From Octopus bimaculoides (taxonomy: Eukaryota): DNA of 64,000 nt. The position numbers and the translations under genes were made by a program. A model generated the notes under the pieces. The model did not search any database. It was not told the DNA's origin and saw only the letters and a list, made by a program, of their open reading frames with translations. Positions 2,119 through 55,876 of this stretch are shown piece after piece. The stretch covers positions 93,702,021 to 93,766,020 of the forward strand of contig NC_068983.1 of the NCBI RefSeq assembly GCF_001194135.2. The letters are read 5' to 3'. Every line of letters begins with the position of its first letter. The stretch's first letter is position 1.

Positions 2119-3054
2119 NNNNNNNNNNNNNNNNNNNNNNNNNNNNNNNNNNNNNNNNNNNNNNNNNNNNNNNNNNNNNNNNNNNNNNNNNNNNNNNNNN
2201 NNNNNNNNNNNNNNNNNNNNNNNNNNNNNNNNNNNNNNNNNNNNNNNNNNNNNNNNNNNNNNNNNNNNNNNNNNNNNNNNNNNNNNNNNNNNNNNNNNNN
2301 NNNNNNNNNNNNNNNNNNNNNNNNNNNNNNNNNNNNNNNNNNNNNNNNNNNNNNNNNNNNNNNNNNNNNNNNNNNNNNNNNNNNNNNNNNNNNNNNNNNN
2401 NNNNNNNNNNNNNNNNNNNNNNNNNNNNNNNNNNNNNNNNNNNNNNNNNNNNNNNNNNNNNNNNNNNNNNNNNNNNNNNNNNNNNNNNNNNNNNNNNNNN
2501 NNNNNNNNNNNNNNNNNNNNNNNNNNNNNNNNNNNNNNNNNNNNNNNNNNNNNNNNNNNNNNNNNNNNNNNNNNNNNNNNNNNNNNNNNNNNNNNNNNNN
2601 NNNNNNNNNNNNNNNNNNNNNNNNNNNNNNNNNNNNNNNNNNNNNNNNNNNNNNNNNNNNNNNNNNNNNNNNNNNNNNNNNNNNNNNNNNNNNNNNNNNN
2701 NNNNNNNNNNNNNNNNNNNNNNNNNNNNNNNNNNNNNNNNNNNNNNNNNNNNNNNNNNNNNNNNNNNNNNNNNNNNNNNNNNNNNNNNNNNNNNNNNNNN
2801 NNNNNNNNNNNNNNNNNNNNNNNNNNNNNNNNNNNNNNNNNNNNNNNNNNNNNNNNNNNNNNNNNNNNNNNNNNNNNNNNNNNNNNNNNNNNNNNNNNNN
2901 NNNNNNNNNNNNNNNNNNNNNNNNNNNNNNNNNNNNNNNNNNNNNNNNNNNNNNNNNNNNNNNNNNNNNNNNNNNNNNNNNNNNNNNNNNNNNNNNNNNN
3001 NNNNNNNNNNNNNNNNNNNNNNNNNNNNNNNNNNNNNNNNNNNNNNNNNNNNNN
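2119..3054. other. Assembly gap inside (TA)n microsatellite (other gaps: 3508-3985, 5350-5405, 17935-17944, 26510-27008, 30154-31130, 41162-41392, 52828-52978, 55627-55680)
   Basis: Runs of N, most bordered by (TA)n. Confidence 0.99.
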
Positions 3055-3507: not shown

Positions 3508-4119
3508 NNNNNNNNNNNNNNNNNNNNNNNNNNNNNNNNNNNNNNNNNNNNNNNNNNNNNNNNNNNNNNNNNNNNNNNNNNNNNNNNNNNNNNNNNNNNN
3601 NNNNNNNNNNNNNNNNNNNNNNNNNNNNNNNNNNNNNNNNNNNNNNNNNNNNNNNNNNNNNNNNNNNNNNNNNNNNNNNNNNNNNNNNNNNNNNNNNNNN
3701 NNNNNNNNNNNNNNNNNNNNNNNNNNNNNNNNNNNNNNNNNNNNNNNNNNNNNNNNNNNNNNNNNNNNNNNNNNNNNNNNNNNNNNNNNNNNNNNNNNNN
3801 NNNNNNNNNNNNNNNNNNNNNNNNNNNNNNNNNNNNNNNNNNNNNNNNNNNNNNNNNNNNNNNNNNNNNNNNNNNNNNNNNNNNNNNNNNNNNNNNNNNN
3901 NNNNNNNNNNNNNNNNNNNNNNNNNNNNNNNNNNNNNNNNNNNNNNNNNNNNNNNNNNNNNNNNNNNNNNNNNNNNNNNNNNNNNATATATAGGCGTCTC
4001 TGCATTTCTAATGAATAATACATAGTCTATTGACTGTTTTTGCTCTCGCTAGACCACTGGTGGTAAATAAAATTTCTAAAATTTTCTTTGCCACCCTATA
4101 ATTTATTAATAATGATAAA

Positions 4120-4157: not shown

Positions 4158-4320
4158 CACAGTATTACTGAGTGGTAAGAAGCCTGCTTCCCAACCACAT
4201 GGTTCAGTCCCACTGCATGATACATTGGACAAATATCTTCTATAGCCTCTGGTTGACCAATGCCTTGTATATAAACTTGGTAGATGGAAGCTCAAAGAAG
4301 CTTGGCATGTGTTTGTGTGA
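4153..4320 (+). mobile_element. tRNA-derived SINE fragment (CORE-like family)
   Basis: Head GGCACAGT..GTGGTAAGAAGCCTGCTTCCCAACCACATGGTTCAGTCCCACTGC shared with copies at 14121, 16590, 34440, 52370 and 55683. Confidence 0.7.
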
Positions 4321-5054
4321 ACATGTGTGTGTATTTATATATACATGTGACATCTGGTCATGACCACACCATTAGCAGCCCGTCCCCACCAACAGCTGAT
4401 AATCCCCTACCAACCTTGGGTTTGAAAAGTACCTCAACTGATTGACATAAAATCACTCACAAACACACTTACAAAGACATCTGCTCCTTGGAAGTAGGTG
4501 GTTACTCTACTGCCACTTCTATTCAGGGACTCAATGGTCACTCATTATTTTATCCAGCTTTCCTCTGGTAGAATGCGATGATTAAGTGCGGCTGTCTGGA
4601 TGATGTTGATTTGGCAGAAGTGAGTGGATATTAAACCTGTATTGATGTCAGTAATCTTTGACAGTGGAGGGAAACACGCAAACACACCTGCACACACACA
4701 CACACAGAGACTGAAACTGAAAGAAGCCTATTGTGTATATATTTGAGTATGTGTGTCTGTCTCCACCCCACCTACTGCTTAACAACTGGTGTTAATGCAT
4801 TTTCATCCCTACAACTTAGCAGTTCAGTAATAGAGTCTGATAGAAATATGCACATAGAGAGACAGGCAGACAGACAAAGGGAGAGGGAGATAGAGAGGAA
4901 AAGAGAGATGTTACAATTTATTAGTTCAACATGACTAACATAAACACCTTCCATCTCTTCATAAACACAGAGAAATTCATTTACACATATAAAGAGCAAA
5001 ACAGAGAGAGAGAGAGGGTGGAGGGAGATAGAGAGAGGAATGAAGAGTACGAGG

Positions 5055-5565
5055 GAAATACTGGTTTCAAATATTAGCACAAGGCCAACAATATCGTGAG
5101 CTGAGGTTAAGTCGATTACATTAATCCCAGTGCTCAACTGGTACTGTTTTATCCACCGCAAAAGATGGAAAGGCAAAGTTGACCCATGTGGCATTTGAAC
5201 TCAGAATGTAAAGTAGGAAGAAATGCCACAAAACATTTTGCCCCACATGGTAATAATTCTGCCAGCTCACCACCTTGTATGAGAGAAATATTGGTTTCAA
5301 ATTTTGGCACAAGGCCAGCAATTTCAGGGGAGGGAGCAAGTCGTTTACANNNNNNNNNNNNNNNNNNNNNNNNNNNNNNNNNNNNNNNNNNNNNNNNNNN
5401 NNNNNCCCCCCCCGGTTTAACTGCTAGTACTTATTTTATCGAGCCTAAATGGGATGAAAGGCAAAGTTGACCTTGGCAGAATTTGAACTCAGAACATTAA
5501 GACAGATGAAATGGTGCTAAGCATTGTGTCCAGCATGCTAATGATTCTGCCAGCTTGCCACCCTA
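5055..5565 (-). mobile_element. Two head-to-tail copies of a roughly 220-bp tRNA-derived SINE
   Basis: Minus strand has GGTGAGCTGGCAGAAT (A-box-like), GAGTTCAAAT (B-box-like) and a CTTTGCCTTTCATCC..GATAAAATAAGTAC core; repeated twice with a small N gap in the second copy. Confidence 0.75.
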
Positions 5566-11883: not shown

Positions 11884-12402
11884 ATGGATGAGGACAGCCG
11901 TGTGAAGAAGTGTCACACCCTAACAGTGGAGGGAACCTATGAAAGAAGTAGACCCAGGAAGACCTCGGATGAAGTGGTAAAGCATGACCTTCAAATGTTG
12001 GGCCTCACAGAGGCAATGACAAGTGACTGAGACCTTTGGAGATTGTGCTTGAATAGACCTGTTGAGTCAAGTGAAATCATTGTCATGGCCGATGTCAGTG
12101 CCACCTGACTAGCACCTATACAGTGCTAGTAAAAAGCACCATTTGAGCATGGCCAATACCGGTGCTGGTGAGCCCCATTCATGCGTGGTCAATGTCAGTG
12201 CCACCTGATTGGCTCTCATGCTGATGGCATGTAAAAAGCACCCACTACACTCTTTGAATGGTTGGCATTAGGAAGGGCATCCAGCTGTAGAAACCTTGTC
12301 AGATTAGATTGGAGCCTGGCGCAGCCTCCTGGCTTGCCAGTCCTCAGTCAAACTGTCCAACTCATGCCAATATGGAAAGCAGACATTAAAGATGATGATG
12401 AT
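11884..12402 (+). mobile_element. 5'-truncated RTE-clade LINE (ORF C-terminus, 3' UTR, (GAT)n tail)
   Basis: MDEDSRVKKCHTLTVEGTYERSRPRKTSDEVVKHDLQMLGLTEAMTSD*DLW matches the RTE C-terminal motif G-R-G-R-P-x-K-T-W; 3' UTR TTAGGAAGGGCATCCAGCTGTAGAAA..ATGGAAAGCAGACATTAAA(GAT)n; sits in a (TA)n tract. Confidence 0.85.
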
Positions 12403-12835
12403 AACAATAATCCTTGGATGGAATTTATTTTAATGCATTACTATGTGAATTTCCACAAATCACGTCTCTTAAGATTACAGTCCATATTCTTGGGATGGTT
12501 ACAGTGTAGTCCATAGTATCTGTTAGCATTAGGTAGATCATCTTCATGGATTCATTTCTTCAGGCGATATTGAATTAATGGATGTTTAACTGAAGGTTAT
12601 ATTGGCACAGCCCCGCCCCAAAACTAGTTCACCCATCAGCATCATTAGACTGTAGTTGGCATAATGGAACAGGAGATTTATTTGCATATCCACAACGTTT
12701 CTCATAAACAAATTTAAAAGATGTGTTTGTATGTATCTATATGTACACCTATATACATATATTCACACACACATTATCTACATACATACTTACATGCATA
12801 CATACATACCTGCACATCAATTTAATGCACGATTA

Positions 12836-13172
12836 CAAAGAGCTATTAATAGTTAGTTTCATGCTTTTACGATACTTTAAATTTGCAGACTTATAAACAC
12901 ACCATTTATCTGCAAGCAATCTTTCGGGTTCTGTTCATGCATTAGATTTATTTTAAAATAATCGAGTTTTATTCATCTTGTATTGATTAATTGTAAGAGT
13001 AGGTTGAAAGTAATTTGAGGTTTGTTACTCAAAGAGTGAACATGTGAACTTATTCTAAAATAAATCTAACACATTAACAGAGCCTGAAAGATTGCTTGGA
13101 GATACATGGCATGTTTAATAAATCTGTCAATTTATAATATCATAAAAGCATGAAACTATTAGTAGCTCATTC
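12836..13172. repeat. Fold-back element: about 125-bp diverged inverted arms, each carrying a hammerhead-like motif, around a 90-bp spacer
   Basis: 12931-12960 CTGTTCATGCATTAGATTTATTTTAAAATA matches the reverse complement of 13051-13080; GAGC..TTTCATGCT (12840-12865) mirrors AGCATGAAA..GCTC (13147-13168). Confidence 0.7.
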
Positions 13173-14292
13173 ATGGTAGTGTATTAAATTGATATTTATC
13201 TCTCACTGATTGGAGTACTTTTTTTATGTTGATTGTACCTGTGTGTGTGTGTGTGTGTGTGTATTATAATAATAAAATCAATAATATTAATACATTTAGT
13301 TTTGTTTGCTTCTGTACGTACCTGTGGTGTGTGTCACACTTACTTCAAAGGAAGAGGTAAAAAGGTTGAAGGGAGAGGTACAAAGAAAAAGAGAAATAAA
13401 AGGTATTAAGCGGGAGAGAGGGGAGGGGCAGAAGCAGAGGAAGTATAGTTGAAGTGAGATGCTAAGTGAGAAAAAAGAGAAAGTAAGAGGGAGTGAAAGA
13501 GAAAGAGTGGAAGATTGATAGCGCTAAGAGGTAAGAAAAATATAACACATTAAACGCAAGAAATGACAGTTAGAGGCAAGGAGAGAGAGGAGGGAAAGGG
13601 GAGGGAGGAGGACAGGGAGAGAGAGATTTAGAGAGATAGATTGAATGAAGGAAGGGAGTGGATAGAGAATAATAGTGAAAACACTTGAAATCTTTCCGTT
13701 TTCAATGTTATGCGCTGGGGTTGATGTAATCGACTTAATCCCTCTGTCTGTCCTTGTTTGTCCCCTCTATGTTTAGCTGCTTGTGGGCAATAAAGAAATA
13801 AGAATAAGTACTAGGCATACAAAAATAAGCCCTGGGATTGATTTCTTTAACTAACCCCCTTTAAGGCAGTACTCCAGCATGGCTTCAGTCAAATGACTGA
13901 AACAAGTAAATATAATAAAAAAAAAAGAGAAAATGAATACTCCAATGGCAACTAGAATAACTTTAACTTTTACTGTTTGTCACCCCCACATTCTTGATAT
14001 TTTTACTTTTAAATATTTATATATTAATGTACAGCTACCTTTATTCAATCATTTATTTATGTGTCTGTATTCAAAAACATCTATGACTGAAATTTTATTT
14101 CTGTTTATATTGATATATGAATAGGCGTAGGTGTGGCAAAAAGCTTGCTTCCCAACCACATGTTTCTGGGTTCAGTTCCACTTCTTGGCACCTTGGGCAA
14201 GTGTCTTCTACTACAGTTTCAGGCAGACCAAGGCCTTGTGAGTGGATTTGATAGACAGAAACTGAAAGAACCCATCGTGTGTATATATACAT

Positions 14293-14388
14293 AGTTTGAA
14301 TTTTTTGACTACAGATGGTCGAACGTCTGTTGTAGTAAGCCAAACGACTGGTTTCGACAGCAATTCTCTTGAACAAATCATTAACAAA
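14293..14388 (-). pseudogene. H2B: Histone H2B fragment (C-terminal part of the histone fold)
   Basis: [32 protein letters not shown] versus canonical [32 protein letters not shown] (23/32 identical by hand); stops before AVRLLLPGEL. Confidence 0.9.
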
Positions 14389-14480
14389 GGTTCCCCAGGC
14401 CTAGATAATCTTCTCACTAGCCATAAATAGTCAGTTGCCTGAGATCAGCTAAGCTTTCGTCTAGTTTGCAGTGATCGTGG

Positions 14481-14667
14481 ATGACGTCAGACAGCGAAGA
14501 TATCAAGAAACCTGTCAAGCCAAATTTAGTCAGATCAAAAAGCAAGAAAGTAAAGCTATTCCAACTACATCTATAAGGTTATGAAACTGGTCCATCCTAA
14601 TACTGGAATATTCAACAAAGCCATTGTCATAATGAACAGCTTCATTAACGATTTGTTCGAGAGAATA
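14481..14667 (+). pseudogene. H2B: Histone H2B fragment (N-terminal tail plus first half of the histone fold), disabled
   Basis: 14554-14667 [38 protein letters not shown] versus canonical [38 protein letters not shown] (28/38). TAA at 14551-14553 where Glu is expected; ATG 14481 is out of frame by 1 nt; ends in (TA)n. Confidence 0.9.
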
Positions 14668-16589
14668 TATATATATGTATCTGTGAGTGTGTGTCTTTGT
14701 GTTTGTTCCTCTATCACCACTTGACAAAAGGTGTTGGTGTGTTTACATCCCCAGCAAAGGAGATCGATGGAATTAGTACTTGATTAAAAAAAAAAATAAG
14801 GTCTGAGGTTGGTTTGTTCAAGTAAAACCCTTCAGTCAAATGACTGAAACAAGTAAAAGGAGTAAAAGAATAGAAGAACATATATTCATATGTATATGTG
14901 TGTATGTGTTCATGTGTACATATGTATATATATTTATATACAGAAATGCATATGCAAACATATGTACATATATGTATGGGTGTGTATGTGTTTTTTGTAT
15001 GTGTGTGTGCACTTTATGCTTTTATTTAGATATATAATATTTATATATATTTATATGTATATATATATCTATATCTATATATATATACACACACACATAT
15101 ATATATATATAAATGTGTGCATATATTTTCTTTTTCTTTTCTGTTTACCTTATTTGTTATTTTAGCTTATTTATTTAAATATTCATGTATTGAACTACTT
15201 AACAGGTGAACTACTTGAAAAATTATGCACTACTCACATGAGCACAATGTTTTCTAATTTTTTCTAGAACAATCCCAAGATAATTATATTTACCATTTCA
15301 GTTGGTCTTTATAGATGTAATCCCCCCTAATTTGAAACCAGTTTGGTTAATGATTTTGGCCCTTTGAGTCACTTGGAAACTTCTGTAAGACACACACATA
15401 CATTTGTGTGTATCTGTGTGTGTGTGTGTGTAGTCTAGTGGTTTGGGAGTTACACTCACAGTTGCTAGATCATGGATTTGATTTCCGGATGGAGCAGCAT
15501 GTTGTTTTCTTGAGCAAAACACTTCATCTTCCATTGTTCTGCAATCATTTCAACATCTGACACATGGCATACTTGTGCATCTGGACAGACAATGTTGATT
15601 TGATGGAGGGTGTGAGCTAATGTACAGCACATACAATTTAATCACTATAAACAAATCTTTTGTGCAGGTTCGGTGGGAGAGTCATATATATATATATATA
15701 TGTATGTTTTATTTTCCTGTTTGTATCACCAAACCTGTACTTTTTAATCATGATATATTTAGATCTTTTCTGTGTCTTTGTCTGCAAAGTTTTTGTTTGA
15801 AAGTACTGCAGCATCTATTATGATGTATTCTACTTTTTAATGTCATGTATAATGATATCTGGTCTGCAGTGCTCAGCTGTTTTGTTGTCTGGATGTCAGA
15901 ATCCAACAGAACAATTAAATACTGCATTTTTGGCTCACCAGTTTCATTATGAACTTTTTTCTGGTACATGTACCACTTGTCTGCTGTGTTGTATCCATAT
16001 TTTTTTACAAAGCAACAAGAATAAATTATCATCATCATCGATATTATCATTATCATCGTCGTCATCATTATTTACTGCCCTGAACAAAATACTGAGTGGT
16101 ATTTCTTCTGACTTCACATTCTGAGTTCAGATTCCACCTGGGTCAATTTTGCTTTTCATCCTTTCAGAGTTACGTAGATAAGTGCCAGTGAAACACTGGT
16201 ATCAATGTAATTGATTAGCATTTTCCACCAGAATTTTCAGGCTTTGTACCTGTAATAATATATTTACTGTTTTGGATGAAATGCAACTAAGCATTTTGTC
16301 CAAAAAGTAAATATATGATTATTTGCATGTTTTGAGTTCAAATTTGAACAGAGTCAGCTTTGCCTTTCATCCTTTTGGGGTCAATTAAATAAGTACCAGT
16401 TGAGCACTGGGTGAGGGGTCGATGTAATCAACTAACCTCTTACAGTTTCTTGCAGCAGTAAGCTCCACTCATCAAACTTCTTGCTATTGTGTAAACAATA
16501 ATCTTTGAACACCCGAGTCACTACAAACATGTTTTGCTTAAAAAAAAGAAAAAAACTCCTTTCAGTTCAAATAAACATAAAATGCACAT

Positions 16590-16835
16590 GCAGCCACATG
16601 ATTTCTGGTTCAGTCCCGCCGCGTAGCACCTTGGGCAAGTGTCTTCTACTATAGCCTCAGGCTGACCAAAGCCTTTTGAGTGGATTTGGTAGACGGAAAG
16701 TGAAAGAAGCCTTTCATGCATGTGTGTATGTGTTTGTGTGTGTATTTGTGTATTTGTCTTTGTATCTGAGTTTGTCCCCTACTGTCACTTGACAACTGGT
16801 GTGGGTGTATTTATGTCTCTGTAACTTAGCAGTTT
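16590..16835 (+). mobile_element. CORE-like SINE, 3'-truncated next to the Gypsy fragment
   Basis: CAGCCACATGATTTCTGGTTCAGTCCCGCCGCGTAGCACCTTGGGCAAGTGTCTTCTACTATAGCC..GACGGAAAGTGAAAGAAGCC..GTAACTTAGCAGTT. Confidence 0.75.
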
Positions 16836-16892
16836 AAATATGCTTCTTTTACTGTCTAAACTGACAATCTCTTCTCTGCAATGTATATTCAG

Positions 16893-17478
16893 TCATAGTT
16901 TTATCTTTAATTGACAAGACTTGCCAAGAATATCATTGTTAGACAAAGGAGAGGACTGCTGTGCAGCATCCGAGGAGGTCTCAGTACACGGACAAACAGC
17001 GCGAGAAGGGTTTCCCGAGAATTCAAGAACTTTATCGGCCATTGTGGCCACTTGGTCCACAGTGTTGGACTCAAATGCCGTCGCTAGAATTGTTTGTACG
17101 TGCGACGGTAGGCGAGAGAAAAAAAATCTTGCGGAGAAGTGGAGCATCTTTTGACTCTCCGCTCAGATCTCGCAAATGGCGCAGAAATTCTGTGGGGGTC
17201 CTGTCACCGAGCTGCTCGTCTGCCATCAACTCAGTAAATCGGCTGGTGGCAGACCTGGTGGTCCGACGTAGGATCTCGTTCTTCACCTCGTCATATGTGG
17301 CGTCGTCTTTGGGAGATGTAATTAGGTCTCTAGCCGCTTTTGCAAGCGATGGAGGCAGATTGCAATAAAGCAACTTTAATCTCTTGGACGGCGAGATGTC
17401 GTAGACCTGGAAATAGGCCTCCAATTGAGCGAAATAGACATCGGTATCACCGATGAATGTGGGTAAACCATGCGACAT
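16893..17478 (-). pseudogene. Ty3/Gypsy gag with one frameshift
   Basis: MSHGLPTFIGDTDVYFAQLEAYF..YDEVKNEILRRT..LMADEQLGDRTPTEFLRHLRDL..LLRKIFF / SRLPSHVQTILA..VDQVATMADKVLEF matches the Gypsy gag pattern WFAQVEAQF..LGDRKPSQLLRRM..FLQRLP..LADK. Frameshift in the A8 run at 17119-17126 (A7 restores the frame). Confidence 0.9.
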
Positions 17479-17742
17479 GTCTACTGGGATGACTCCGTCA
17501 AGGTAGGAAAAGGGAATGGAAAGAAACAATGAAAACGAAGTCGTAGAAATATACGAGAGGTCAAAAAGAAAAGACAATATTTTTCGTGTTCTTGTTTTTG
17601 TGTTTTGTAAGTTAGTGTGCACAAAAGAGAGAGAGAAAAAAAAAAATTTGTAAAAACAATTTTGTTTTGTTTGCTTTTTTTTTTTTCTTCGTGAGGGGTG
17701 TTGCTTTGTACTGTCTAGAAAAAAATATTGTTGACCAACCTT

Positions 17743-18071
17743 ACGTCGTTGCTGCAAGGAAAAAAACAGGCAAAACAAAAAGGTTTTTTTTATGTATGTG
17801 TGTAATATTTTTTTTCTTTTTTTGTAAGACAATAGATGGAAGCAACGTTGTTTGTTTTGTTTTTTTTTCGTTTCAAACCACGTGGAGTCAGACAGAAAGA
17901 GAAATCACTGTTCGCTTTTTTGTTCTTTCACCAGNNNNNNNNNNACGTCGTTGCTGCAAGGAAAAAAACAGGCAAAACAAAAAGGTTTTTTTTATGTATG
18001 TGTGTAATATTTTTTTTCTTTTTTTGTAAGACAATAGATGGAAGCAACGTTGTTTGTTTTGTTTTTTTTTC
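17743..18071. repeat. 127-bp direct duplication (17743-17869 = 17945-18071) across a 10-N gap in the Gypsy leader
   Basis: Same ACGTCGTTGCTGCAAGG..GTTTTTTTTTC block, offset 202 bp. Confidence 0.85.
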
Positions 18072-18095: not shown

Positions 18096-18475
18096 TATAA
18101 GAATTGGATGAGATATGATGGCTTGGCCATCTCTCCCCAGTTCTCATATTAATCATTAAATTCAGAAATACAACACGAGGGATAACGGTAACAACAGATC
18201 AATAATTTATTCCTGGTTGGCGTAGAGCCGTTTCGTTCCTGGGTGAACAGGCATGCCGCTAGAATACCAAAGGAAGCTTCGACCGCATGTCGGTGCCGAG
18301 TTGTCAGAGAGTTTGAAAGAACGTCTTGTTACGACGCCGGCTGGATGAAAAAGAGCGGGAACGCTGTTGCTTTTTTCTCCACCTGTTGCATTGCGCATGC
18401 GTGCTCGGGTACTTCCGCTGACGGCAAATTCCTTGCACATGTGCAATGGCACTTCCCAAGATGGCGGCCACTACA
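18096..18475 (-). mobile_element. Ty3/Gypsy LTR (5'-LTR position), about 380 bp
   Basis: Starts TGTAGTGG (18475), ends ..CTTATA (imperfect inverse of TGTAG), has AATAAA at 18206-18211 on the minus strand, and is followed by the PBS. Confidence 0.7.
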
Positions 18476-18720
18476 ACTTTAAAAGGTCCAGTGTATTTAT
18501 ATTTCAGTGAATTATGAGTAGCATCGTTATGTACGAAAACAGTCCAAGAATTAATATCAGAGGGAATGAAACTTTTAACATTCTGTAATTTTCTCGCAAA
18601 AGCAGGAATATCAGTAAGAAATCTTTGAAGACGAGTTACATAATCATTAACATCTCCATCAAAAGAATTGTTTTCTTCAAACATTTGACCAGTTAATGTT
18701 GTTCCGGTGGAGACGGACTA
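18476..18720 (-). pseudogene. Ty3/Gypsy integrase C-terminal fragment
   Basis: GTTLTGQMFEENNSFDGDVNDYVTRLQRFL..SFIPSDINSWTVFVHNDATHNSLKYKYTGPFKV matches the IN tail YGTTLRLPGEFF..DYV..FIPKDL..HVFVRHD..LQPPYDGPFKV (GPY/F motif). Confidence 0.8.
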
Positions 18721-26509: not shown

Positions 26510-27119
26510 NNNNNNNNNNNNNNNNNNNNNNNNNNNNNNNNNNNNNNNNNNNNNNNNNNNNNNNNNNNNNNNNNNNNNNNNNNNNNNNNNNNNNNNNNNN
26601 NNNNNNNNNNNNNNNNNNNNNNNNNNNNNNNNNNNNNNNNNNNNNNNNNNNNNNNNNNNNNNNNNNNNNNNNNNNNNNNNNNNNNNNNNNNNNNNNNNNN
26701 NNNNNNNNNNNNNNNNNNNNNNNNNNNNNNNNNNNNNNNNNNNNNNNNNNNNNNNNNNNNNNNNNNNNNNNNNNNNNNNNNNNNNNNNNNNNNNNNNNNN
26801 NNNNNNNNNNNNNNNNNNNNNNNNNNNNNNNNNNNNNNNNNNNNNNNNNNNNNNNNNNNNNNNNNNNNNNNNNNNNNNNNNNNNNNNNNNNNNNNNNNNN
26901 NNNNNNNNNNNNNNNNNNNNNNNNNNNNNNNNNNNNNNNNNNNNNNNNNNNNNNNNNNNNNNNNNNNNNNNNNNNNNNNNNNNNNNNNNNNNNNNNNNNN
27001 NNNNNNNNATATATATATATATGTATATGTATGTATAAACGTATACACACACACACACAAACATATATAAACACACACACACTGCATCCTTTTTTTTACT
27101 ACCAAATTATTCACTAGTC

Positions 27120-30153: not shown

Positions 30154-31130
30154 NNNNNNNNNNNNNNNNNNNNNNNNNNNNNNNNNNNNNNNNNNNNNNN
30201 NNNNNNNNNNNNNNNNNNNNNNNNNNNNNNNNNNNNNNNNNNNNNNNNNNNNNNNNNNNNNNNNNNNNNNNNNNNNNNNNNNNNNNNNNNNNNNNNNNNN
30301 NNNNNNNNNNNNNNNNNNNNNNNNNNNNNNNNNNNNNNNNNNNNNNNNNNNNNNNNNNNNNNNNNNNNNNNNNNNNNNNNNNNNNNNNNNNNNNNNNNNN
30401 NNNNNNNNNNNNNNNNNNNNNNNNNNNNNNNNNNNNNNNNNNNNNNNNNNNNNNNNNNNNNNNNNNNNNNNNNNNNNNNNNNNNNNNNNNNNNNNNNNNN
30501 NNNNNNNNNNNNNNNNNNNNNNNNNNNNNNNNNNNNNNNNNNNNNNNNNNNNNNNNNNNNNNNNNNNNNNNNNNNNNNNNNNNNNNNNNNNNNNNNNNNN
30601 NNNNNNNNNNNNNNNNNNNNNNNNNNNNNNNNNNNNNNNNNNNNNNNNNNNNNNNNNNNNNNNNNNNNNNNNNNNNNNNNNNNNNNNNNNNNNNNNNNNN
30701 NNNNNNNNNNNNNNNNNNNNNNNNNNNNNNNNNNNNNNNNNNNNNNNNNNNNNNNNNNNNNNNNNNNNNNNNNNNNNNNNNNNNNNNNNNNNNNNNNNNN
30801 NNNNNNNNNNNNNNNNNNNNNNNNNNNNNNNNNNNNNNNNNNNNNNNNNNNNNNNNNNNNNNNNNNNNNNNNNNNNNNNNNNNNNNNNNNNNNNNNNNNN
30901 NNNNNNNNNNNNNNNNNNNNNNNNNNNNNNNNNNNNNNNNNNNNNNNNNNNNNNNNNNNNNNNNNNNNNNNNNNNNNNNNNNNNNNNNNNNNNNNNNNNN
31001 NNNNNNNNNNNNNNNNNNNNNNNNNNNNNNNNNNNNNNNNNNNNNNNNNNNNNNNNNNNNNNNNNNNNNNNNNNNNNNNNNNNNNNNNNNNNNNNNNNNN
31101 NNNNNNNNNNNNNNNNNNNNNNNNNNNNNN

Positions 31131-37773: not shown

Positions 37774-38130
37774 CAGACAAAGAACCTTCTGACAGCCCTA
37801 TGTATGCAGCTTTTGCTATGCTAACAACTCCAAAGAGTACACCAACATTACAACGACGTACTCCAATAGAAGAATTACCTACAGAGGGGACTTCAACTGA
37901 AGCCAGTGGTAGCGGTGATACAAAAGCAAGCAAAGCCAAGTCTCTTTCTGTTGCAAGTCAACCTCCTCACCAAGAAAGGAAGAAAGTCAAGACTAATCAG
38001 CATCGTTCTTTAAGTGACCAATGTTTTATTGCTCTGTTTTGGGCATTTGTCCTCGTACGACTTTGGATGCATGCATGGATTCTTCTACTTATACCTATTC
38101 CAGTGCTGTTTATGATTTTCAAAAAACTCT
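37774..38130 (+). CDS. TMEM245: TMEM245 internal coding exon (phase 1 to phase 1)
   Basis: Acceptor TTCTATTCAG|, donor |GTAAGT. DKEPSDSPMYAAF..LSDQCFIALFWAFVLVRLWMHAWILLLIPIPVLFMIFKKL aligns to vertebrate TMEM245 [40 protein letters not shown] (recalled). Confidence 0.88.
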
Positions 38131-39090
38131 GTAAGTATAATTCATAGCTATGATTGTAATCCTTATGCTAAAGTGATATAGAGAATTTGTCCACAGTAAA
38201 AAATAAATATATTCTAAAACAAGTATAGAGCAGAATTTTTGAAATATTATGTATTTCAAATGTAGTTGTATAATCAAGAAGTTTACTTCCCAACCACAAG
38301 GTTTTAGGTTCAGTTCTATTGCATGATACCTTGAGCAAGTGTCTTCAACTATAGCCTTGAGCCAATCAAATTAAGTTAAATAGAACTTGAAAAGTGCCCA
38401 TTACCTTTCAGACCCTCACAGACTAGTGAGGTTGCTATGACTGATGTCCAGTGTGAACATCTTCAAAGCAATATCTGCATGAAATAAAACATAGGCAACT
38501 CAGAAGCTAGGTGAGAGTCTTCTCCAAAATCTTACAACAAAGTGAATTCAGTCAATGATGTCAAACCAGTTAGTGTGTAAGCCTCTCACCAAACTACATG
38601 AATCTGTTGGTGCTGTTAAAGTGGGCAGCACATTAAGCATACCACCATCAAAAGAATGGGAAGGTTTTGAAATGTAAACTTCAAAACAGCAGATTGTACA
38701 AAGTGACTTTGTTAAAAAAGGGTTTTGTAGCAAAAGTATTGAGCACAGCTGTACTGAGGTGCGTATGTATTAGGAATGCTTCATGTATGTTAGGTAAAAA
38801 CAACATTATTAGTTCCCAATTAACTAGCATCATCATTAGCATCATTTTCTCCTCTCTTTTTTTTTTGCTGGCATGAGTTGGATGAGTCATCATGGACTGA
38901 ATCAGCCCTCATTTGGTATTGCTACCCTCTTAGATGCATCAGGGATACTGTTCCACTCTTACATTTAATTTTTTATATAATTTCTGTTGGATGCCATTCC
39001 TATCACTGACAATATTAGATAAAAAAAAAAAAATGAAAAATCAAAGATTTTACTAAGGTGAAAGCATATAATGCACAACATTTAACAATT

Positions 39091-40900: not shown

Positions 40901-42028
40901 CTTAACACATAAACTTTCAACACCCTTTATTTTTTAAACAAAACACGACTCTCAATTTCAGGCATCTTAATTTTTCCAACTATTATCTACATGGATTACC
41001 ATTGAACTTTAAAAGCTCAAAGACAATATAATGTATTGGTATATTTATTTTTTTATATATTGTTTTAAACTTTTTTGTAAAAATCATTTTCATTCTCCCT
41101 CTTCTTGAAAATTTGCCAAGCAATGAAAGCCGGTTAGAAATCCTTTTTACACATCTATATTNNNNNNNNNNNNNNNNNNNNNNNNNNNNNNNNNNNNNNN
41201 NNNNNNNNNNNNNNNNNNNNNNNNNNNNNNNNNNNNNNNNNNNNNNNNNNNNNNNNNNNNNNNNNNNNNNNNNNNNNNNNNNNNNNNNNNNNNNNNNNNN
41301 NNNNNNNNNNNNNNNNNNNNNNNNNNNNNNNNNNNNNNNNNNNNNNNNNNNNNNNNNNNNNNNNNNNNNNNNNNNNNNNNNNNNNNNNNNNNTATATATA
41401 TATATATATCAAAGTCATATGATTTGAATAGTCAATGGTAAATGGATATGAAGGCAGGAAATAATTAATGAGCCTACTTTGATGTACTAAGTATTGAACC
41501 TTCAGTTGTGTAGTGTTATTTCTTTTGTTATAAATATGTTACTTTTTGAAGCACTTATTGTTATAACTATATTCTGAGCTTTTATGAAATGTTTCTCTCA
41601 TAACAAGTACTTGAGGTAAAGTGAGAATATATAAGACTTGTGCTGAAATAGTTAATTAGATCTTAGAATTATTGTACTTCACTGTTTAGATTATTGTAAG
41701 ATGATTCTGTATTGTAATCCCATTGAGTAAAGCAACATTGAAGTAATGGAATTTAATGCAACAACAACAATACCTGTTGTTAAAAGTATTTAAAAGAAAA
41801 TCTTTAGAGCTGAATAAAAAATAAAATAAAATAAAACTGTGAATCAACCCTTTCTAAAACAATATTTGATTTCATGACATGTGGCCAAGTGAAATACAGG
41901 TGTAATGGTATTGAATAATGATGTGGATATCTGATTGATTTAAGTGGTTTTATTGTGTTTGGAATGCACCCAAGTACTTGATATTTATAAATGTTTCTCA
42001 TTTTTGTTTTCTTTTCCTATTCTTTTAG

Positions 42029-52369: not shown

Positions 52370-52800
52370 GGTACAGGTATGGCTGTGTGGTTAAGAAGTT
52401 TACTTCCCAGCCATGAGATTTTGGATTCAATCTCACTTCATGGTATGTTGGACAAGTGAATTCTACTATAGCCCTGGGCCAACCAAAGCCTTGTAAATGG
52501 ATTCAGTAGATGGAAATTGAAAGATGACTATCATATATATATATATGTGTGTATATGTGTGCATGTGTCTGTATCTTTGTGTGTGTTTCCCCCCCACCAC
52601 CACCACCACCACCACTTGACAGCTGGTGTTGGTGTCTTTATGTCCCTGTAACTTAGCAGCTTGGCAAAAGAGAGTGATAGAGTAAGTGCCAGACTTAAGA
52701 AAATAAGTATCAGGGTCGATTTGTTCAACTATAATTCTTCATGGTGGTGCCCCAGCCTGGCTGCTGTCTAATGACTGAAACAAGTAAACGATAAAAGATA
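52370..52800 (+). mobile_element. CORE-like SINE, near full length
   Basis: GGCTGTGTGGTTAAGAAGTTTACTTCCCAGCC..CTACTATAGCCCTGGGCCAACCAAAGCC..GTAACTTAGCAGC..ATGACTGAAACAAGTAAA. Confidence 0.8.
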
Positions 52801-52978
52801 AAGATATATATATATATATATATATATNNNNNNNNNNNNNNNNNNNNNNNNNNNNNNNNNNNNNNNNNNNNNNNNNNNNNNNNNNNNNNNNNNNNNNNNN
52901 NNNNNNNNNNNNNNNNNNNNNNNNNNNNNNNNNNNNNNNNNNNNNNNNNNNNNNNNNNNNNNNNNNNNNNNNNNNNNN

Positions 52979-53012
<34 letters not shown>

Positions 53013-54285
53013 CATCGTCGTTGTCGTCATCGTCGTCATCATCATCAGCATCATCATCGTCGTCATCATCATCAGCATCATCATCGTCGTCATCATCATC
53101 ATCAATGGTCCATTTTCCAAGCTGACATAGTTTGACAAGATCCACCAAGCTACAGGACTGTGATGCGCAGGATGTGATGTCAGCTCTGACGTGGTTTCTA
53201 CAGCTGGATGCCCTTCATAATGCCTCCACTTTACAGAATGCACTGGGTACCTTTTTTTTTTCATGCCACCTGCACTATTGAGGTTGCCAAGTAACTTGTC
53301 CTGCAAGTAACTTGCAAGACAAGAAGACAACAGGAAAAAGAGAAACACTTCCTTGACTAAATGGAGGCAGAGTATTTGAGAGGGAAAGAAGGAGCAATTG
53401 TTCTATGCCTGGTGTTGAGAGGCTAAAGTGTGATAGAGGGACAAGCCTAGATGTTTTGCTATTGAGGAGATACAAGGCTACCCTATATGAGGGAGTAGCT
53501 GGAAAGAAGATAGATAGAGATGGTGGTGATGTGATGCCAGGGCATCTTGAGATACAAGAAGATGGGCATAAAGGAATATATATAAACAGTAGATGAAGGG
53601 AGAGCAATAAAGGTAAAGGTACCCACCCCTGTGGAAGTGTGTAGCTTAGTGGTTAGGGTGTTGGATTCATGATTGTAAGATTGTGGAGAGTAATAAAGGT
53701 AAAGGTAAAATTACCTTCTTGAGTCATGCAGACCCTCAAGGGCCAGTTTCTTGGTTTCATGGGGTATAAACCTGGACAGGATGCCAGTCCATCACAGGAT
53801 TACTCATTTGGACTGGAGCGATATGAAATGAAGTGTTTTGCTCAATAACACAATGCATTGATTGATCCAGGGATCGAAACCACAATCTTACAATCATGAG
53901 TCCAACACCCTAACCACTTAGCCACACCTGGTTAGAGATAGGATAGAGGTGACTGTGGTCTGACCAAGGACAGAGGTGCAGTTGATAGGAAATACCAGTA
54001 TGGAAAGGGGAGAATGTGTGTATGTTTGTGTCTTCTCTTGACATCATATGATAGTTGTATATGAGCATCATTGTCATACAAGCTGTGTCGTTCATTTCCA
54101 GTAATCTGCAAAAATATGTCTGGTCATAGGGAATTATAATCTTGAGGGTTGGCAGCAGGAATGCCATCTTGTTCTACATAAACTTCATCTGTCTCAATAA
54201 CCTTCATCTTATCCATGCAAGCACAGAAAAGTGGACATTAAAATGATGGTGATGAATTGTAATGAATTTTTAATGTAATCAACTT

Positions 54286-54863: not shown

Positions 54864-55845
54864 GTAAGTTCTGTAAAGATGATCTTGAGAAATGAATGCC
54901 AGATCTTTTGTCTTCTAGCAACTATGAAATAATTTAATAAATGCAGCTTAACATGCAAACCAACACCATGTGACATGTCTCAATAGGATTGCCTTTCTTT
55001 CTCTCTCTTTATTTTTTCTTTATTCCTGCCTTTTCCAGTTTCATCTAGTCTTTCCTTCTCTGTTTTTTTTCACTATCTGAAGAAGGACAATGTTCAAATC
55101 GTTATAAAAGTCTGAAAACAAGTGCATATAGTTAAAACAAACTTAGGAAAATGCTCTGGGTAGGCAAATTATTAAGACTTCCTCACTGACCTATGATGAT
55201 CCTTTTAAAAGATTAGAAATACTGGGTCTTTGAATTCACTTTTGCTATTTTTATCAAAATAATATGTTAGTTTCCTTTCAAATAATTCTTTAACACCAGA
55301 ACATAAAGATAATATTGCAAGTGAAATGTGTCACCTGTCTGAAGCAATTAGTTGGTTGAGTTTCCTGCGCTTGATAACTCAGTAGAATCAATGGCAGTTA
55401 TAAGTGAAAGAGGCATACAGACAAAAAGCAAGTTATCCAAGGACAACCTCTGTCAGTGACCTCTGATAGACAAAACACAGATGTTGTTTAGTCATAAATC
55501 AGCCCTAACTAAAAACATTGATTGTAAATCACATCTTGTTATTTTTGTTTTTATGTTCATTGCTCTCTTGCTCTCACCCTCTCTCTCTTTACCTCTCTTT
55601 ACACACACATATATATATATATATATNNNNNNNNNNNNNNNNNNNNNNNNNNNNNNNNNNNNNNNNNNNNNNNNNNNNNNAGTAAGGCACAGGCATGGCT
55701 GTGTGATAAGAAGTTTGCTTTCCAACCACATGGTTCCAGGTTCAGTCCCACTGTGTGGTCTTTGGGCAATTGTCTTCTGCTATATATCCTCAGGCTGGTC
55801 AAAACCTAGTGAGTGGATTTCAGAAACTGATACAAGCCTGTCATG

Positions 55846-55876
<31 letters not shown>

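What the first reader, a model, noticed from the sequence alone, without database searches (positions are those of the whole stretch)
14293..14667. Split, inverted histone H2B fragments captured inside a SINE's internal (TA)n
Seen: the H2B N-terminal half on + (14481-14667) and the C-terminal part on minus (14388-14293) point away from each other. They overlap by nine codons (F-x-N-D-L-F-x-R-I in both; 5 of 27 nt differ) and both carry Leu where canonical H2B has Ile. The whole block of about 375 bp interrupts a single CORE-like SINE. The geometry (inverted 5' segment whose 3' breakpoint nearly coincides with the start of the sense 3' segment) is the twin-priming pattern of non-LTR retrotransposition. 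However, there is no poly(A) and no clear TSD, replication-dependent histone mRNAs normally lack poly(A), and the insert includes a TATA-like sequence, which favours templated DNA repair. The differences in the overlap imply either an old event or two paralogous donors.
Basis: partly seen in the sequence, partly recalled or inferred. Interest (0 to 1): 0.7.

Follow-up and report, generated by a model that had tools for sequence, protein, structure and literature searches.

The report
Dead histone H2B patch inside SINE
A 375-bp, long-dead copy of a histone H2B gene, in two pieces that face away from each other, was patched into a break in the TA-repeat in the middle of a SINE; it is a real and tidy molecular fossil of DNA-break repair, with no sign of function.

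Summary
tblastn finds two H2B pieces and no other histone in the 64 kb. Codons 1-70 lie on + (14481-14666). Codons 62-93 lie on - (14389-14293). The pieces overlap by 27 nt with 4 mismatches. The joined flanks align as one contiguous SINE, and the block sits in its internal (TA)n.

The ATG at 14481 aligns with the ATG of four reference H2B genes, three of them gastropod. A TATA-like CATAAATAG lies at -58; the three gastropod genes have their TATA at -60 or -61. The chance of this placement is about 0.06-0.08. So the copy probably includes about 60 nt of untranscribed promoter. It also lacks the last 29 codons, the 3' stem-loop and any poly(A).

The geometry matches twin priming: both break ends primed on one template strand. 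The content argues against canonical LINE retroposition of an mRNA. It fits a templated patch repair of a break in the (TA)n, probably copied from DNA.

Both pieces have decayed by about 0.10-0.12 changes per site, and the host SINE by about 0.14. One old event therefore explains the differences in the overlap.

I could not obtain the donor gene, so DNA versus RNA template stays unsettled. A T6 run argues against the SINE having mobilised this cargo. Interest is low to moderate.

The parts
14122..14292 (+). Host SINE, left arm (tRNA-like head plus CORE-like centre), ending in a short remnant of the internal TA tract (TGTATATATACAT)
   Evidence: Aligns with intact copies c34 and c45. 14.2% substitutions against the consensus of 11 copies in the window.
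14293..14389 (-). H2B piece B: codons 62-93 ([32 protein letters not shown]), antisense to the SINE. It may extend 4 nt further (GTTC, 14390-14393 = Asn60) across a 2-nt deletion.
   Evidence: tblastn E 8e-12. Codon alignment to four reference H2B CDSs. At least 7 nonsynonymous changes over 74 sites.
14301..14306 (+). T6 run on the SINE's sense strand, about 10 nt into the insert; a Pol III terminator
   Evidence: Read directly from the sequence. That Pol III stops at T runs is established knowledge.
14390..14480 (+). 91-nt stretch directly upstream of the H2B start codon; probably the 5' UTR plus proximal promoter of the donor gene
   Evidence: Contiguous with the ATG that aligns to the reference ATGs. 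No H2B coding similarity on either strand. No sequence similarity to the four reference H2B promoters, which also do not resemble each other.
14422..14430 (+). TATA-like CATAAATAG, 58 nt upstream of the ATG
   Evidence: TATA boxes of the Haliotis, Aplysia and Pomacea H2B genes lie at -61, -61 and -60. Chance of such a motif in a 9-nt interval is 0.06-0.08.
14481..14666 (+). H2B piece A: start codon to codon 70. The N-terminal tail is shortened by about 23 nt, which gives a frameshift and an in-frame TAA at 14551-14553. The histone fold reads [38 protein letters not shown].
   Evidence: tblastn E 6e-17. Alignment. At least 10 nonsynonymous changes over 91 sites.
14363..14389 (-). Overlap arm 1 (codons 62-70 in piece B)
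   Evidence: Inverted repeat I1: 27 nt, 85% complementary, 250 nt between the arms.
14640..14666 (+). Overlap arm 2 (codons 62-70 in piece A)
14667..14866 (+). Rest of the internal (TA)n/(TG)n tract and the right arm of the same host SINE
   Evidence: Continues the alignment with c34 and c45 exactly where the left arm stops.

Best explanation
The block is a dead relic of one old, complex, templated 'patch' insertion. A double-strand break, or a staggered pair of nicks, arose in the internal (TA)n tract of an already resident CORE-type SINE. The two 3' ends of the break each primed copying on the same strand of an H2B gene template. The + strand end of the left flank started at codon 93 and copied back to codon 62. 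The - strand end of the right flank started at codon 70 and copied back through the start codon to about 91 nt upstream. The two products were then joined. This gives two H2B pieces that point away from each other and share codons 62-70. The template most likely was DNA of the histone gene unit, for example a fragment, a displaced strand or an extrachromosomal circle from the tandem histone cluster. The reason is that the copy seems to contain the TATA box and about 34 nt beyond it, and lacks the mRNA 3' end. Nothing was functional afterwards, and both pieces decayed neutrally. Shown: the anatomy, the interruption of a single SINE, the decay, and the TATA position. Inferred: the break, the two-ended priming, and the DNA nature of the template.
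For: Two H2B pieces and no other histone in the 64 kb. The flanks join into a single SINE at its (TA)n. The ATG aligns with the reference ATGs, and the pieces end at codons 70 and 93 directly against TA repeats. The 27-nt overlap has 4 mismatches. The TATA-like motif lies at -58, against -60 or -61 in three gastropod H2B genes, p about 0.06-0.08. There is no histone 3' stem-loop, no poly(A), and codons 94-122 are missing. Decay is 0.11 and 0.10 per nonsynonymous site in the two pieces, 0.148 between the overlap copies and 0.142 in the host SINE. That fits one event after the SINE inserted. Both copies share the two-step ATC to TTG change at codon 66, so they have a common source. In the literature, class 2 templated insertions have no TSD or poly(A) and show end-joining features (PMC5110952). 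Tandem histone clusters shed extrachromosomal circles that may reintegrate as orphons (PMC3225859).
Against: The species' own H2B gene was never obtained. Calling the 91-nt stretch a promoter therefore rests only on its contiguity with the ATG and on the position of one TATA-like motif in a 67% A+T genome. The stretch shows no sequence similarity to the reference promoters, though this is uninformative because those promoters do not resemble each other either. Microhomology at the three junctions is at most 2-4 nt and cannot be scored without the donor. Two-ended priming is inferred from geometry alone; template switching by one polymerase gives the same product.
Confidence: 0.5

Rival explanations
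1. RNA-templated twin priming. A LINE reverse transcriptase, either by target-primed reverse transcription or by endonuclease-independent use of a pre-existing break, copied an H2B transcript from both ends of the lesion. This would be a 5'-inverted retrocopy of a histone RNA.
For: The geometry is exactly that of 5'-inverted L1 copies (PMC2912911). The target is AT-rich. The genome is full of SINEs, so LINE reverse transcriptase has been active. Class 2 templated insertions in humans are thought to be reverse-transcribed RNA patches (PMC5110952).
Against: The copy reaches 91 nt upstream of the ATG, about 60 nt beyond where a TATA box at -58 would place the transcription start. The 3' end stops inside the coding region at codon 93. 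There is no stem-loop, no poly(A) and no recognisable TSD. LINE retrocopies are typically 5'-truncated, not 3'-truncated (established knowledge). The RNA would have to be an upstream-initiated or read-through transcript that was primed internally.
Confidence: 0.2
2. Two steps. A contiguous H2B gene fragment (promoter to codon 93) was first inserted in minus orientation. Later its promoter-proximal part was inverted in place by staggered breaks, one in codons 62-70 and one in the palindromic (TA)n. Such staggered breaks duplicate the 27 nt as an inverted repeat.
For: Staggered-break inversions leave inverted duplications at their ends (established knowledge from Drosophila inversions). The second breakpoint would be invisible in (TA)n. 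Both copies share the Leu66 TTG. The overlap divergence (0.148) is somewhat lower than the sum of the two pieces' decay (about 0.21). That is the direction expected if the duplication is younger than the insertion.
Against: It needs two rare events at one 375-bp site. The difference between 0.148 and 0.21 rests on 4 of 27 sites and is not significant. Leu66 may simply be the donor's residue, since NDLF occurs in some natural H2Bs (P0077 and P0081).
Confidence: 0.13
3. The inverted arrangement was not made here. Either a single contiguous patch was copied from a donor locus that was already rearranged, or two separate fragments from two paralogous H2B units were ligated into the same break.
For: Histone genes are multicopy, so several near-identical templates exist. 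Three of the four overlap differences are transitions, and two are at synonymous sites that also vary among the references.
Against: Neutral decay already accounts for the differences. Two independent fragments whose end points happen to fall within 27 nt of each other in twin-priming geometry would be a coincidence. No second copy of any part of the block exists in the 64 kb.
Confidence: 0.1
4. Assembly artefact. The block was mis-joined into the SINE at TA repeats.
For: The window is a gapped assembly. It has nine N runs, seven of them flanked by (TA)n.
Against: The TA tracts at the two junctions are only about 8-13 nt, shorter than any assembly k-mer or read. No gap lies within 3 kb of the block; the nearest are 5350-5405 and 17935-17944. 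The two flanks are the two complementary halves of one SINE. The insert is a decayed pseudogene, not a collapsed functional cluster.
Confidence: 0.04

Closest known systems
Class 2 templated sequence insertions: 'patch' repair of double-strand breaks with filler DNA, including NUMT-type capture (PMC5110952; PMC2567098)
   Same: A short sequence templated from a distant locus sits at a single site. It has no poly(A), no poly(A) signal and no recognisable TSD, and its junctions have little or no microhomology. It has no function.
   Different: This one is made of two pieces of the same gene in inverted order with a 27-nt overlap. Human class 2 events are thought to be reverse-transcribed RNA, whereas this one appears to include promoter DNA. 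The break lay in a SINE's internal microsatellite.
5'-inverted L1 and mRNA retrocopies made by twin priming (PMC2912911; Ostertag and Kazazian 2001, cited from memory)
   Same: The topology is identical. An upstream segment is inverted and a downstream segment is in sense. The outer end of the inverted segment nearly coincides with the start of the sense segment, here overlapping it by 27 nt.
   Different: The 3' end of the transcript, the poly(A) and the TSD are missing, and the inverted segment runs past the expected transcription start into the promoter.
Histone orphons: dispersed solitary copies derived from tandem histone clusters (Childs et al. 1981, cited via PMC3225859)
   Same: A histone gene copy lies outside any cluster, carries non-transcribed flanking DNA, sits next to repetitive elements, and is degenerate.
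   Different: Orphons are usually whole genes or whole repeat units. This one is 375 bp, truncated at both ends and internally inverted.
Microhomology-mediated template switching (FoSTeS/MMBIR; own knowledge)
   Same: Short inverted and overlapping segments copied from one nearby stretch of template are typical products.
   Different: Those events usually copy from near the break. Here the template is a gene that does not lie within at least 14 kb on one side and 49 kb on the other.

Membership tests
Histone H2B (pseudogene) | Significant similarity to the H2B histone fold | tested here: met
   tblastn E 6e-17 and 8e-12. phmmer with the 61-aa composite finds ordinary H2Bs at 69-74% identity, E about 1e-20.
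Histone H2B (pseudogene) | Loss of coding capacity | tested here: met
   The gene is split and inverted. The N-terminal tail has a frameshift and a TAA. Codons 94-122 are missing. At least 17 replacements fall at residues that are near-invariant in 116 H2Bs.
LINE-mediated processed retrocopy (including twin-priming 5' inversion) | Inverted 5' segment next to a sense 3' segment, with nearly coincident break points | tested here: met
   Codons 1-70 are inverted relative to codons 62-93.
LINE-mediated processed retrocopy (including twin-priming 5' inversion) | Contains the 3' end of the transcript with a poly(A) or other 3' tail | tested here: not met
   The copy ends at codon 93 against the TA repeat. 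There is no stem-loop (Rfam, E up to 1) and no A run.
LINE-mediated processed retrocopy (including twin-priming 5' inversion) | Target-site duplication | tested here: inconclusive
   Both flanks are TA repeats, so any TSD of TA units is invisible. The only direct repeat (14275-14293 and 14657-14675, 79%) includes H2B sequence.
LINE-mediated processed retrocopy (including twin-priming 5' inversion) | Copy limited to transcribed sequence, with no promoter | tested here: inconclusive
   A TATA-like motif at -58 matches the TATA position in three gastropod genes, but p is only about 0.06-0.08 and the donor was not available.
Class 2 templated insertion (DSB patch) | Templated from a distant locus; no TSD, poly(A) or poly(A) signal; end-joining type junctions | tested here: met
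   No histone gene elsewhere in the 64 kb. No poly(A). Junction microhomology is at most 2-4 nt. Definition taken from PMC5110952.
Histone orphon | Solitary histone copy away from the cluster that carries non-transcribed flank | tested here: inconclusive
   The copy is solitary. Whether its flank is non-transcribed depends on the TATA inference.
CORE-SINE (host element) | tRNA-related head plus the conserved CORE central domain | tested here: inconclusive
The local alignment has z about 2.8. ARAGORN finds no tRNA. Octopus OR1 is listed as a CORE-SINE in PMC4824008, but I did not compare it with this element.
SINE carrying cargo (transduction or mobilised chimaera) | Further copies of the chimaera, and a transcript able to span the cargo | tested here: not met
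   No second copy of the insert in the window. A T6 Pol III terminator lies at 14301-14306 on the SINE sense strand. The genome-wide test could not be done.

The most novel reading that the evidence does not exclude
The internal (TA)n tracts of this very abundant SINE may be recurrent fragile sites. Their breaks would be mended by two-ended, twin-priming-like copying of highly expressed S-phase gene units such as the histone cluster. The SINE family would then be a genome-wide trap for promoter and exon fragments, giving a route to shuffling gene pieces in cephalopods without LINE endonuclease. In the RNA variant of this reading, non-polyadenylated, upstream-initiated histone transcripts serve as reverse-transcription templates.
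Probability: 0.1. Interest if true: 0.5.

Novelty: new member of a known kind. Interest (0 to 1): 0.25.

Why it matters
The block is a clean natural example of a complex templated insertion in a mollusc, probably a cephalopod. One gene was copied in two overlapping, oppositely oriented pieces into a microsatellite break. It shows that twin-priming geometry alone does not prove LINE-mediated retroposition, because the same topology appears here together with apparent promoter DNA and without the transcript's 3' end. For annotation, it should be labelled a fragmentary H2B pseudogene inside a SINE, not a gene. Beyond that, a single decayed event has little wider consequence unless a genome-wide census shows that the SINE's (TA)n tracts capture such patches repeatedly.

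Tried and rejected
1. Two homologous-protein searches, one with the 61-aa composite and one with the 93-aa junction ORF, found nothing. The fragments share too few exact 5-mers with real H2Bs.

It returned 120 H2Bs, none named as cephalopod. The species' own H2B locus therefore could not be fetched.

3. The look-up of encoding contigs on three window ORFs (14095-14376-, 14581-14724+, 37800-38147+) found nothing on record. That left no independent assembly of the locus and no species identification.

4. A metagenome scan for the inner junction 24-mer gave 0 hits.

5. Local alignment of the 91-nt stretch against the 100 nt upstream of the four reference H2B genes gave p of 0.3-0.87. The test is uninformative, because those promoters do not resemble each other either.

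6. The tblastn extension of the minus piece to 14418 ('SEKII*AWGT') looked random when I compared the bases by eye. Only GTTC at 14390-14393 may belong to the piece.

7. The direct repeat D3 (14419-14434 and 14518-14533, 13 of 16) is at chance level by my own rough estimate, and the tool warns that short two-copy families are often chance. I saw no terminal inverted repeats at the ends of the block, so a DNA transposon is unlikely (sequence).

8. Rfam found no histone stem-loop, only sub-threshold miRNA hits in TA/TG microsatellites.

9. The representative search cannot exclude a divergent H2B paralogue as donor. Its library is clustered at 50% identity.

10. The Ostertag and Kazazian 2001 paper could not be retrieved.

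Full report
**What is there**

Reading 13600-15400 and translating all frames shows two stretches of histone H2B.
- On the + strand, 14554-14667 reads [38 protein letters not shown].
- On the - strand, 14388-14293 reads [32 protein letters not shown].
- tblastn of a canonical H2B against the 64-kb window scores them at E 6e-17 and 8e-12.
- H2A, H3 and H4 find nothing credible, and there is no further H2B hit.

So the block is solitary. The nearest possible histone cluster is more than 14 kb away on one side and more than 49 kb on the other.

**Extent of the pieces**

I fetched four reference H2B loci. Three are gastropod: Haliotis rubra L004, Aplysia californica L005 and Pomacea canaliculata L006. 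One, L003, is of unknown origin. I aligned their coding sequences with both window pieces.
- The ATG at 14481 falls on the reference ATGs.
- The N-terminal tail is about 23 nt shorter than in the references. This shifts the frame and creates a TAA at 14551-14553.
- From Ser33 (14554) the piece is colinear with the references up to GAG AGA AT (codon 70, 14666). The TA repeat follows directly.
- The minus piece is colinear from codon 62 (14388/14389) to ACT (Thr93, 14295-14293). TA-rich SINE sequence follows.
- It may extend four more bases (GTTC, 14390-14393 = Asn60) across a 2-nt deletion.
- Codons 94-122 and the 3' UTR are absent. Rfam finds no histone 3' stem-loop in 12000-17000 even at E up to 1.

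The two pieces share codons 62-70 as an inverted repeat, 14363-14389 against 14640-14666: 27 nt with 4 mismatches.

**The host**

The joined flanks (14110-14292 plus 14668-14880) align from end to end with two intact repeat copies in the window, at 34850-34415(-) and 45960-45545(-). The join falls in their internal (TA)n/(TG)n tract. About a dozen copies or fragments of this element occur in the window.

Its centre contains ACCTTGGGCAAGT, which I recall as the core of MIR-type CORE-SINEs. PMC4824008 lists the octopus OR1 element among CORE-SINEs. "CORE-like SINE" is therefore plausible but was not rigorously tested. The species was not identified; I suspect a cephalopod from memory of its SINEs.

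**The 91 nt between the pieces**

The stretch 14390-14480 has no H2B coding similarity on either strand. It is contiguous with the start codon, so it should be the gene's 5' flank unless it is unrelated filler.
- It contains CATAAATAG at 14422-14430, with ATAAATA starting at -58 from the ATG.
- The three gastropod genes have TATATA, TATAAA and TATAA at -61, -61 and -60. L003 has TTAAATAG at -63.
- In this window (32.5% G+C), a match to TATAWAWR with at most one mismatch falls in a given 9-nt interval with probability 0.06-0.08.
- The evidence is therefore suggestive, not conclusive.
- Sequence similarity to the reference promoters is absent. It is equally absent among those promoters themselves.
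- If the TATA is real, transcription would start near 14450-14455. The copy would then extend about 60 nt into untranscribed DNA.
- In the three gastropod loci H2A lies head to head with H2B, 235 bp upstream in Haliotis and 341 bp in Aplysia. Position -91 is then inside the shared intergenic promoter.

**Age, and one donor or two**

At residues that are near-invariant in 116 H2Bs, the two pieces have decayed by similar amounts.

| Sequence | Changes | Sites | Per site |
|---|---|---|---|
| Plus piece | at least 10 nonsynonymous | 91 | 0.11 |
| Minus piece | at least 7 nonsynonymous | 74 | 0.10 |
| Two overlap copies | 4 differences | 27 | 0.148 |
| Host SINE left arm vs window consensus | 22 substitutions | 155 | 0.142 |

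- Independent neutral decay of two copies made at the same time predicts a difference of about 0.2 in the overlap. The observed 0.148 is within sampling error of that.
- The insert is somewhat less decayed than the SINE it interrupts, as it must be.
- A second, paralogous donor is therefore not needed.
- Both copies share GAT TTG TTC, where all four references have ATC. That is two base changes, so the copies have a common source. Either the donor encodes Leu66, as some natural H2Bs do (P0077 and P0081), or the 27 nt were duplicated from an already mutated copy.
- A HMMER search of 1.84 billion representatives with the 61-aa composite finds only ordinary H2Bs at 69-74% identity. This fits a decayed canonical gene. 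The library's 50% clustering could hide a closer paralogue.

**Mechanism**

On the + strand the block reads: antisense codons 93 to 62, then sense -91 to codon 70.
- The 3' end of the left flank's + strand is continuous with an antisense copy that starts at codon 93.
- The 3' end of the right flank's - strand is continuous with an antisense copy that starts at codon 70 and runs to -91.
- So both ends of one break appear to have primed synthesis on the same (sense) template strand, and the two products were then joined.
- This is the topology of twin priming as described for 5'-inverted L1 copies (PMC2912911).

The content does not fit canonical LINE retroposition of an mRNA.
- The 3' end of the transcript is missing.
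- There is no poly(A).
- A TSD cannot be seen.
- The copy seems to pass the transcription start.

It does fit class 2 templated insertions. These are patches that repair double-strand breaks, with no TSD and no poly(A) (PMC5110952). The probable difference is that the template here was DNA. Tandem histone clusters are known to shed extrachromosomal circles and rolling-circle intermediates, which have been proposed to reintegrate as "orphons" (PMC3225859). That is a plausible source of template but was not tested here.

My best explanation is a single DNA-templated, two-ended patch repair of a break in the SINE's (TA)n (confidence 0.5). The rivals are:

| Rival | Confidence |
|---|---|
| RNA-templated twin priming on an upstream-initiated transcript | 0.2 |
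| Simple insertion followed by an in-place staggered-break inversion, which would also duplicate the 27 nt | 0.13 |
| Copy of an already rearranged donor, or two donors | 0.1 |
| Misassembly | 0.04 |

**Assembly**

The window has nine N runs, seven of them flanked by (TA)n, so long TA tracts defeated this assembly. The tracts at the H2B junctions are only about 8-13 nt. The nearest gaps are at 5350-5405 and 17935-17944. The flanks are the complementary halves of one SINE. I therefore regard the junctions as probably sound, but only long reads can prove it.

**Function and mobilisation**

Nothing suggests function. The gene is split, frameshifted, truncated and riddled with replacements at invariant residues.

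A run of six T (14301-14306) lies on the SINE's sense strand about 10 nt into the insert. By established knowledge of Pol III termination, it would stop a SINE transcript there. No second copy of the insert occurs in the window. A genome-wide search could not be run.

**Verdict**

The block is a new example of known kinds of event: a templated patch insertion and a histone orphon or pseudogene. Its twin-priming-like anatomy is instructive. Interest is low to moderate (0.25). The one decisive test is aligning the 91-nt stretch to the species' own H2B promoter, and that needs the genome, which these tools could not reach.

Noticed in passing
window 2119-3054, 3508-3985, 26510-27008, 30154-31130, 41162-41392, 52828-52978, 55627-55680 (also 5350-5405 and 17935-17944): The window has nine runs of N, and seven are flanked by (TA)n. 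It comes from a gapped assembly that could not resolve long TA microsatellites. There are 43 (TA) tracts of 5 or more units in 64 kb.
   Followed up: partly
window 17071-17832 (-), with neighbouring ORFs 16961-17368 (+) and 18304-18684 (-): A 253-aa ORF matches Pfam DUF7041 (E 1.6e-10, above the curated cut-off). It is probably a remnant of a retrotransposon gag-like gene, and a 10-N gap at 17935-17944 lies just beyond its upstream end.
   Followed up: partly
window 4161-4348, 16591-16835, 55695-55872: Several SINE copies have the left arm and the microsatellite, but unrelated sequence follows where the right arm should be. Either the family has modular 3' parts, or the internal microsatellite is a recurrent breakpoint or insertion site.
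   Followed up: no
window 13700-13925: A 3' fragment of another copy of the same SINE family, with an A-rich tail, lies about 200 bp upstream of the host SINE.
   Followed up: no
window 12728-12799 and 14893-15110: Rfam gives sub-threshold matches to mir-297, mir-466 and similar families (45 bits against a gathering score of 90). They lie in TA/TG microsatellite and are low-complexity artefacts, not miRNA genes.
   Followed up: yes
L004, L005, L006 (gastropod H2B loci) and L001-L003: In Haliotis, Aplysia and Pomacea, H2A and H2B are divergently arranged, with intergenic regions of a few hundred bp (235 bp in Haliotis, 341 bp in Aplysia). The H2B TATA box sits at a fixed -60 or -61 from the ATG, although the promoter sequences are unalignable. 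The unidentified L001/L003 gene has an ATTTGCAT octamer about 15 nt upstream of its TATA-like motif.
   Followed up: partly
window 52725-53348 (-): ORFs here carry long runs of Asp or of Met/Thr next to a TA-flanked gap. This is translated low-complexity DNA, not a gene.
   Followed up: no
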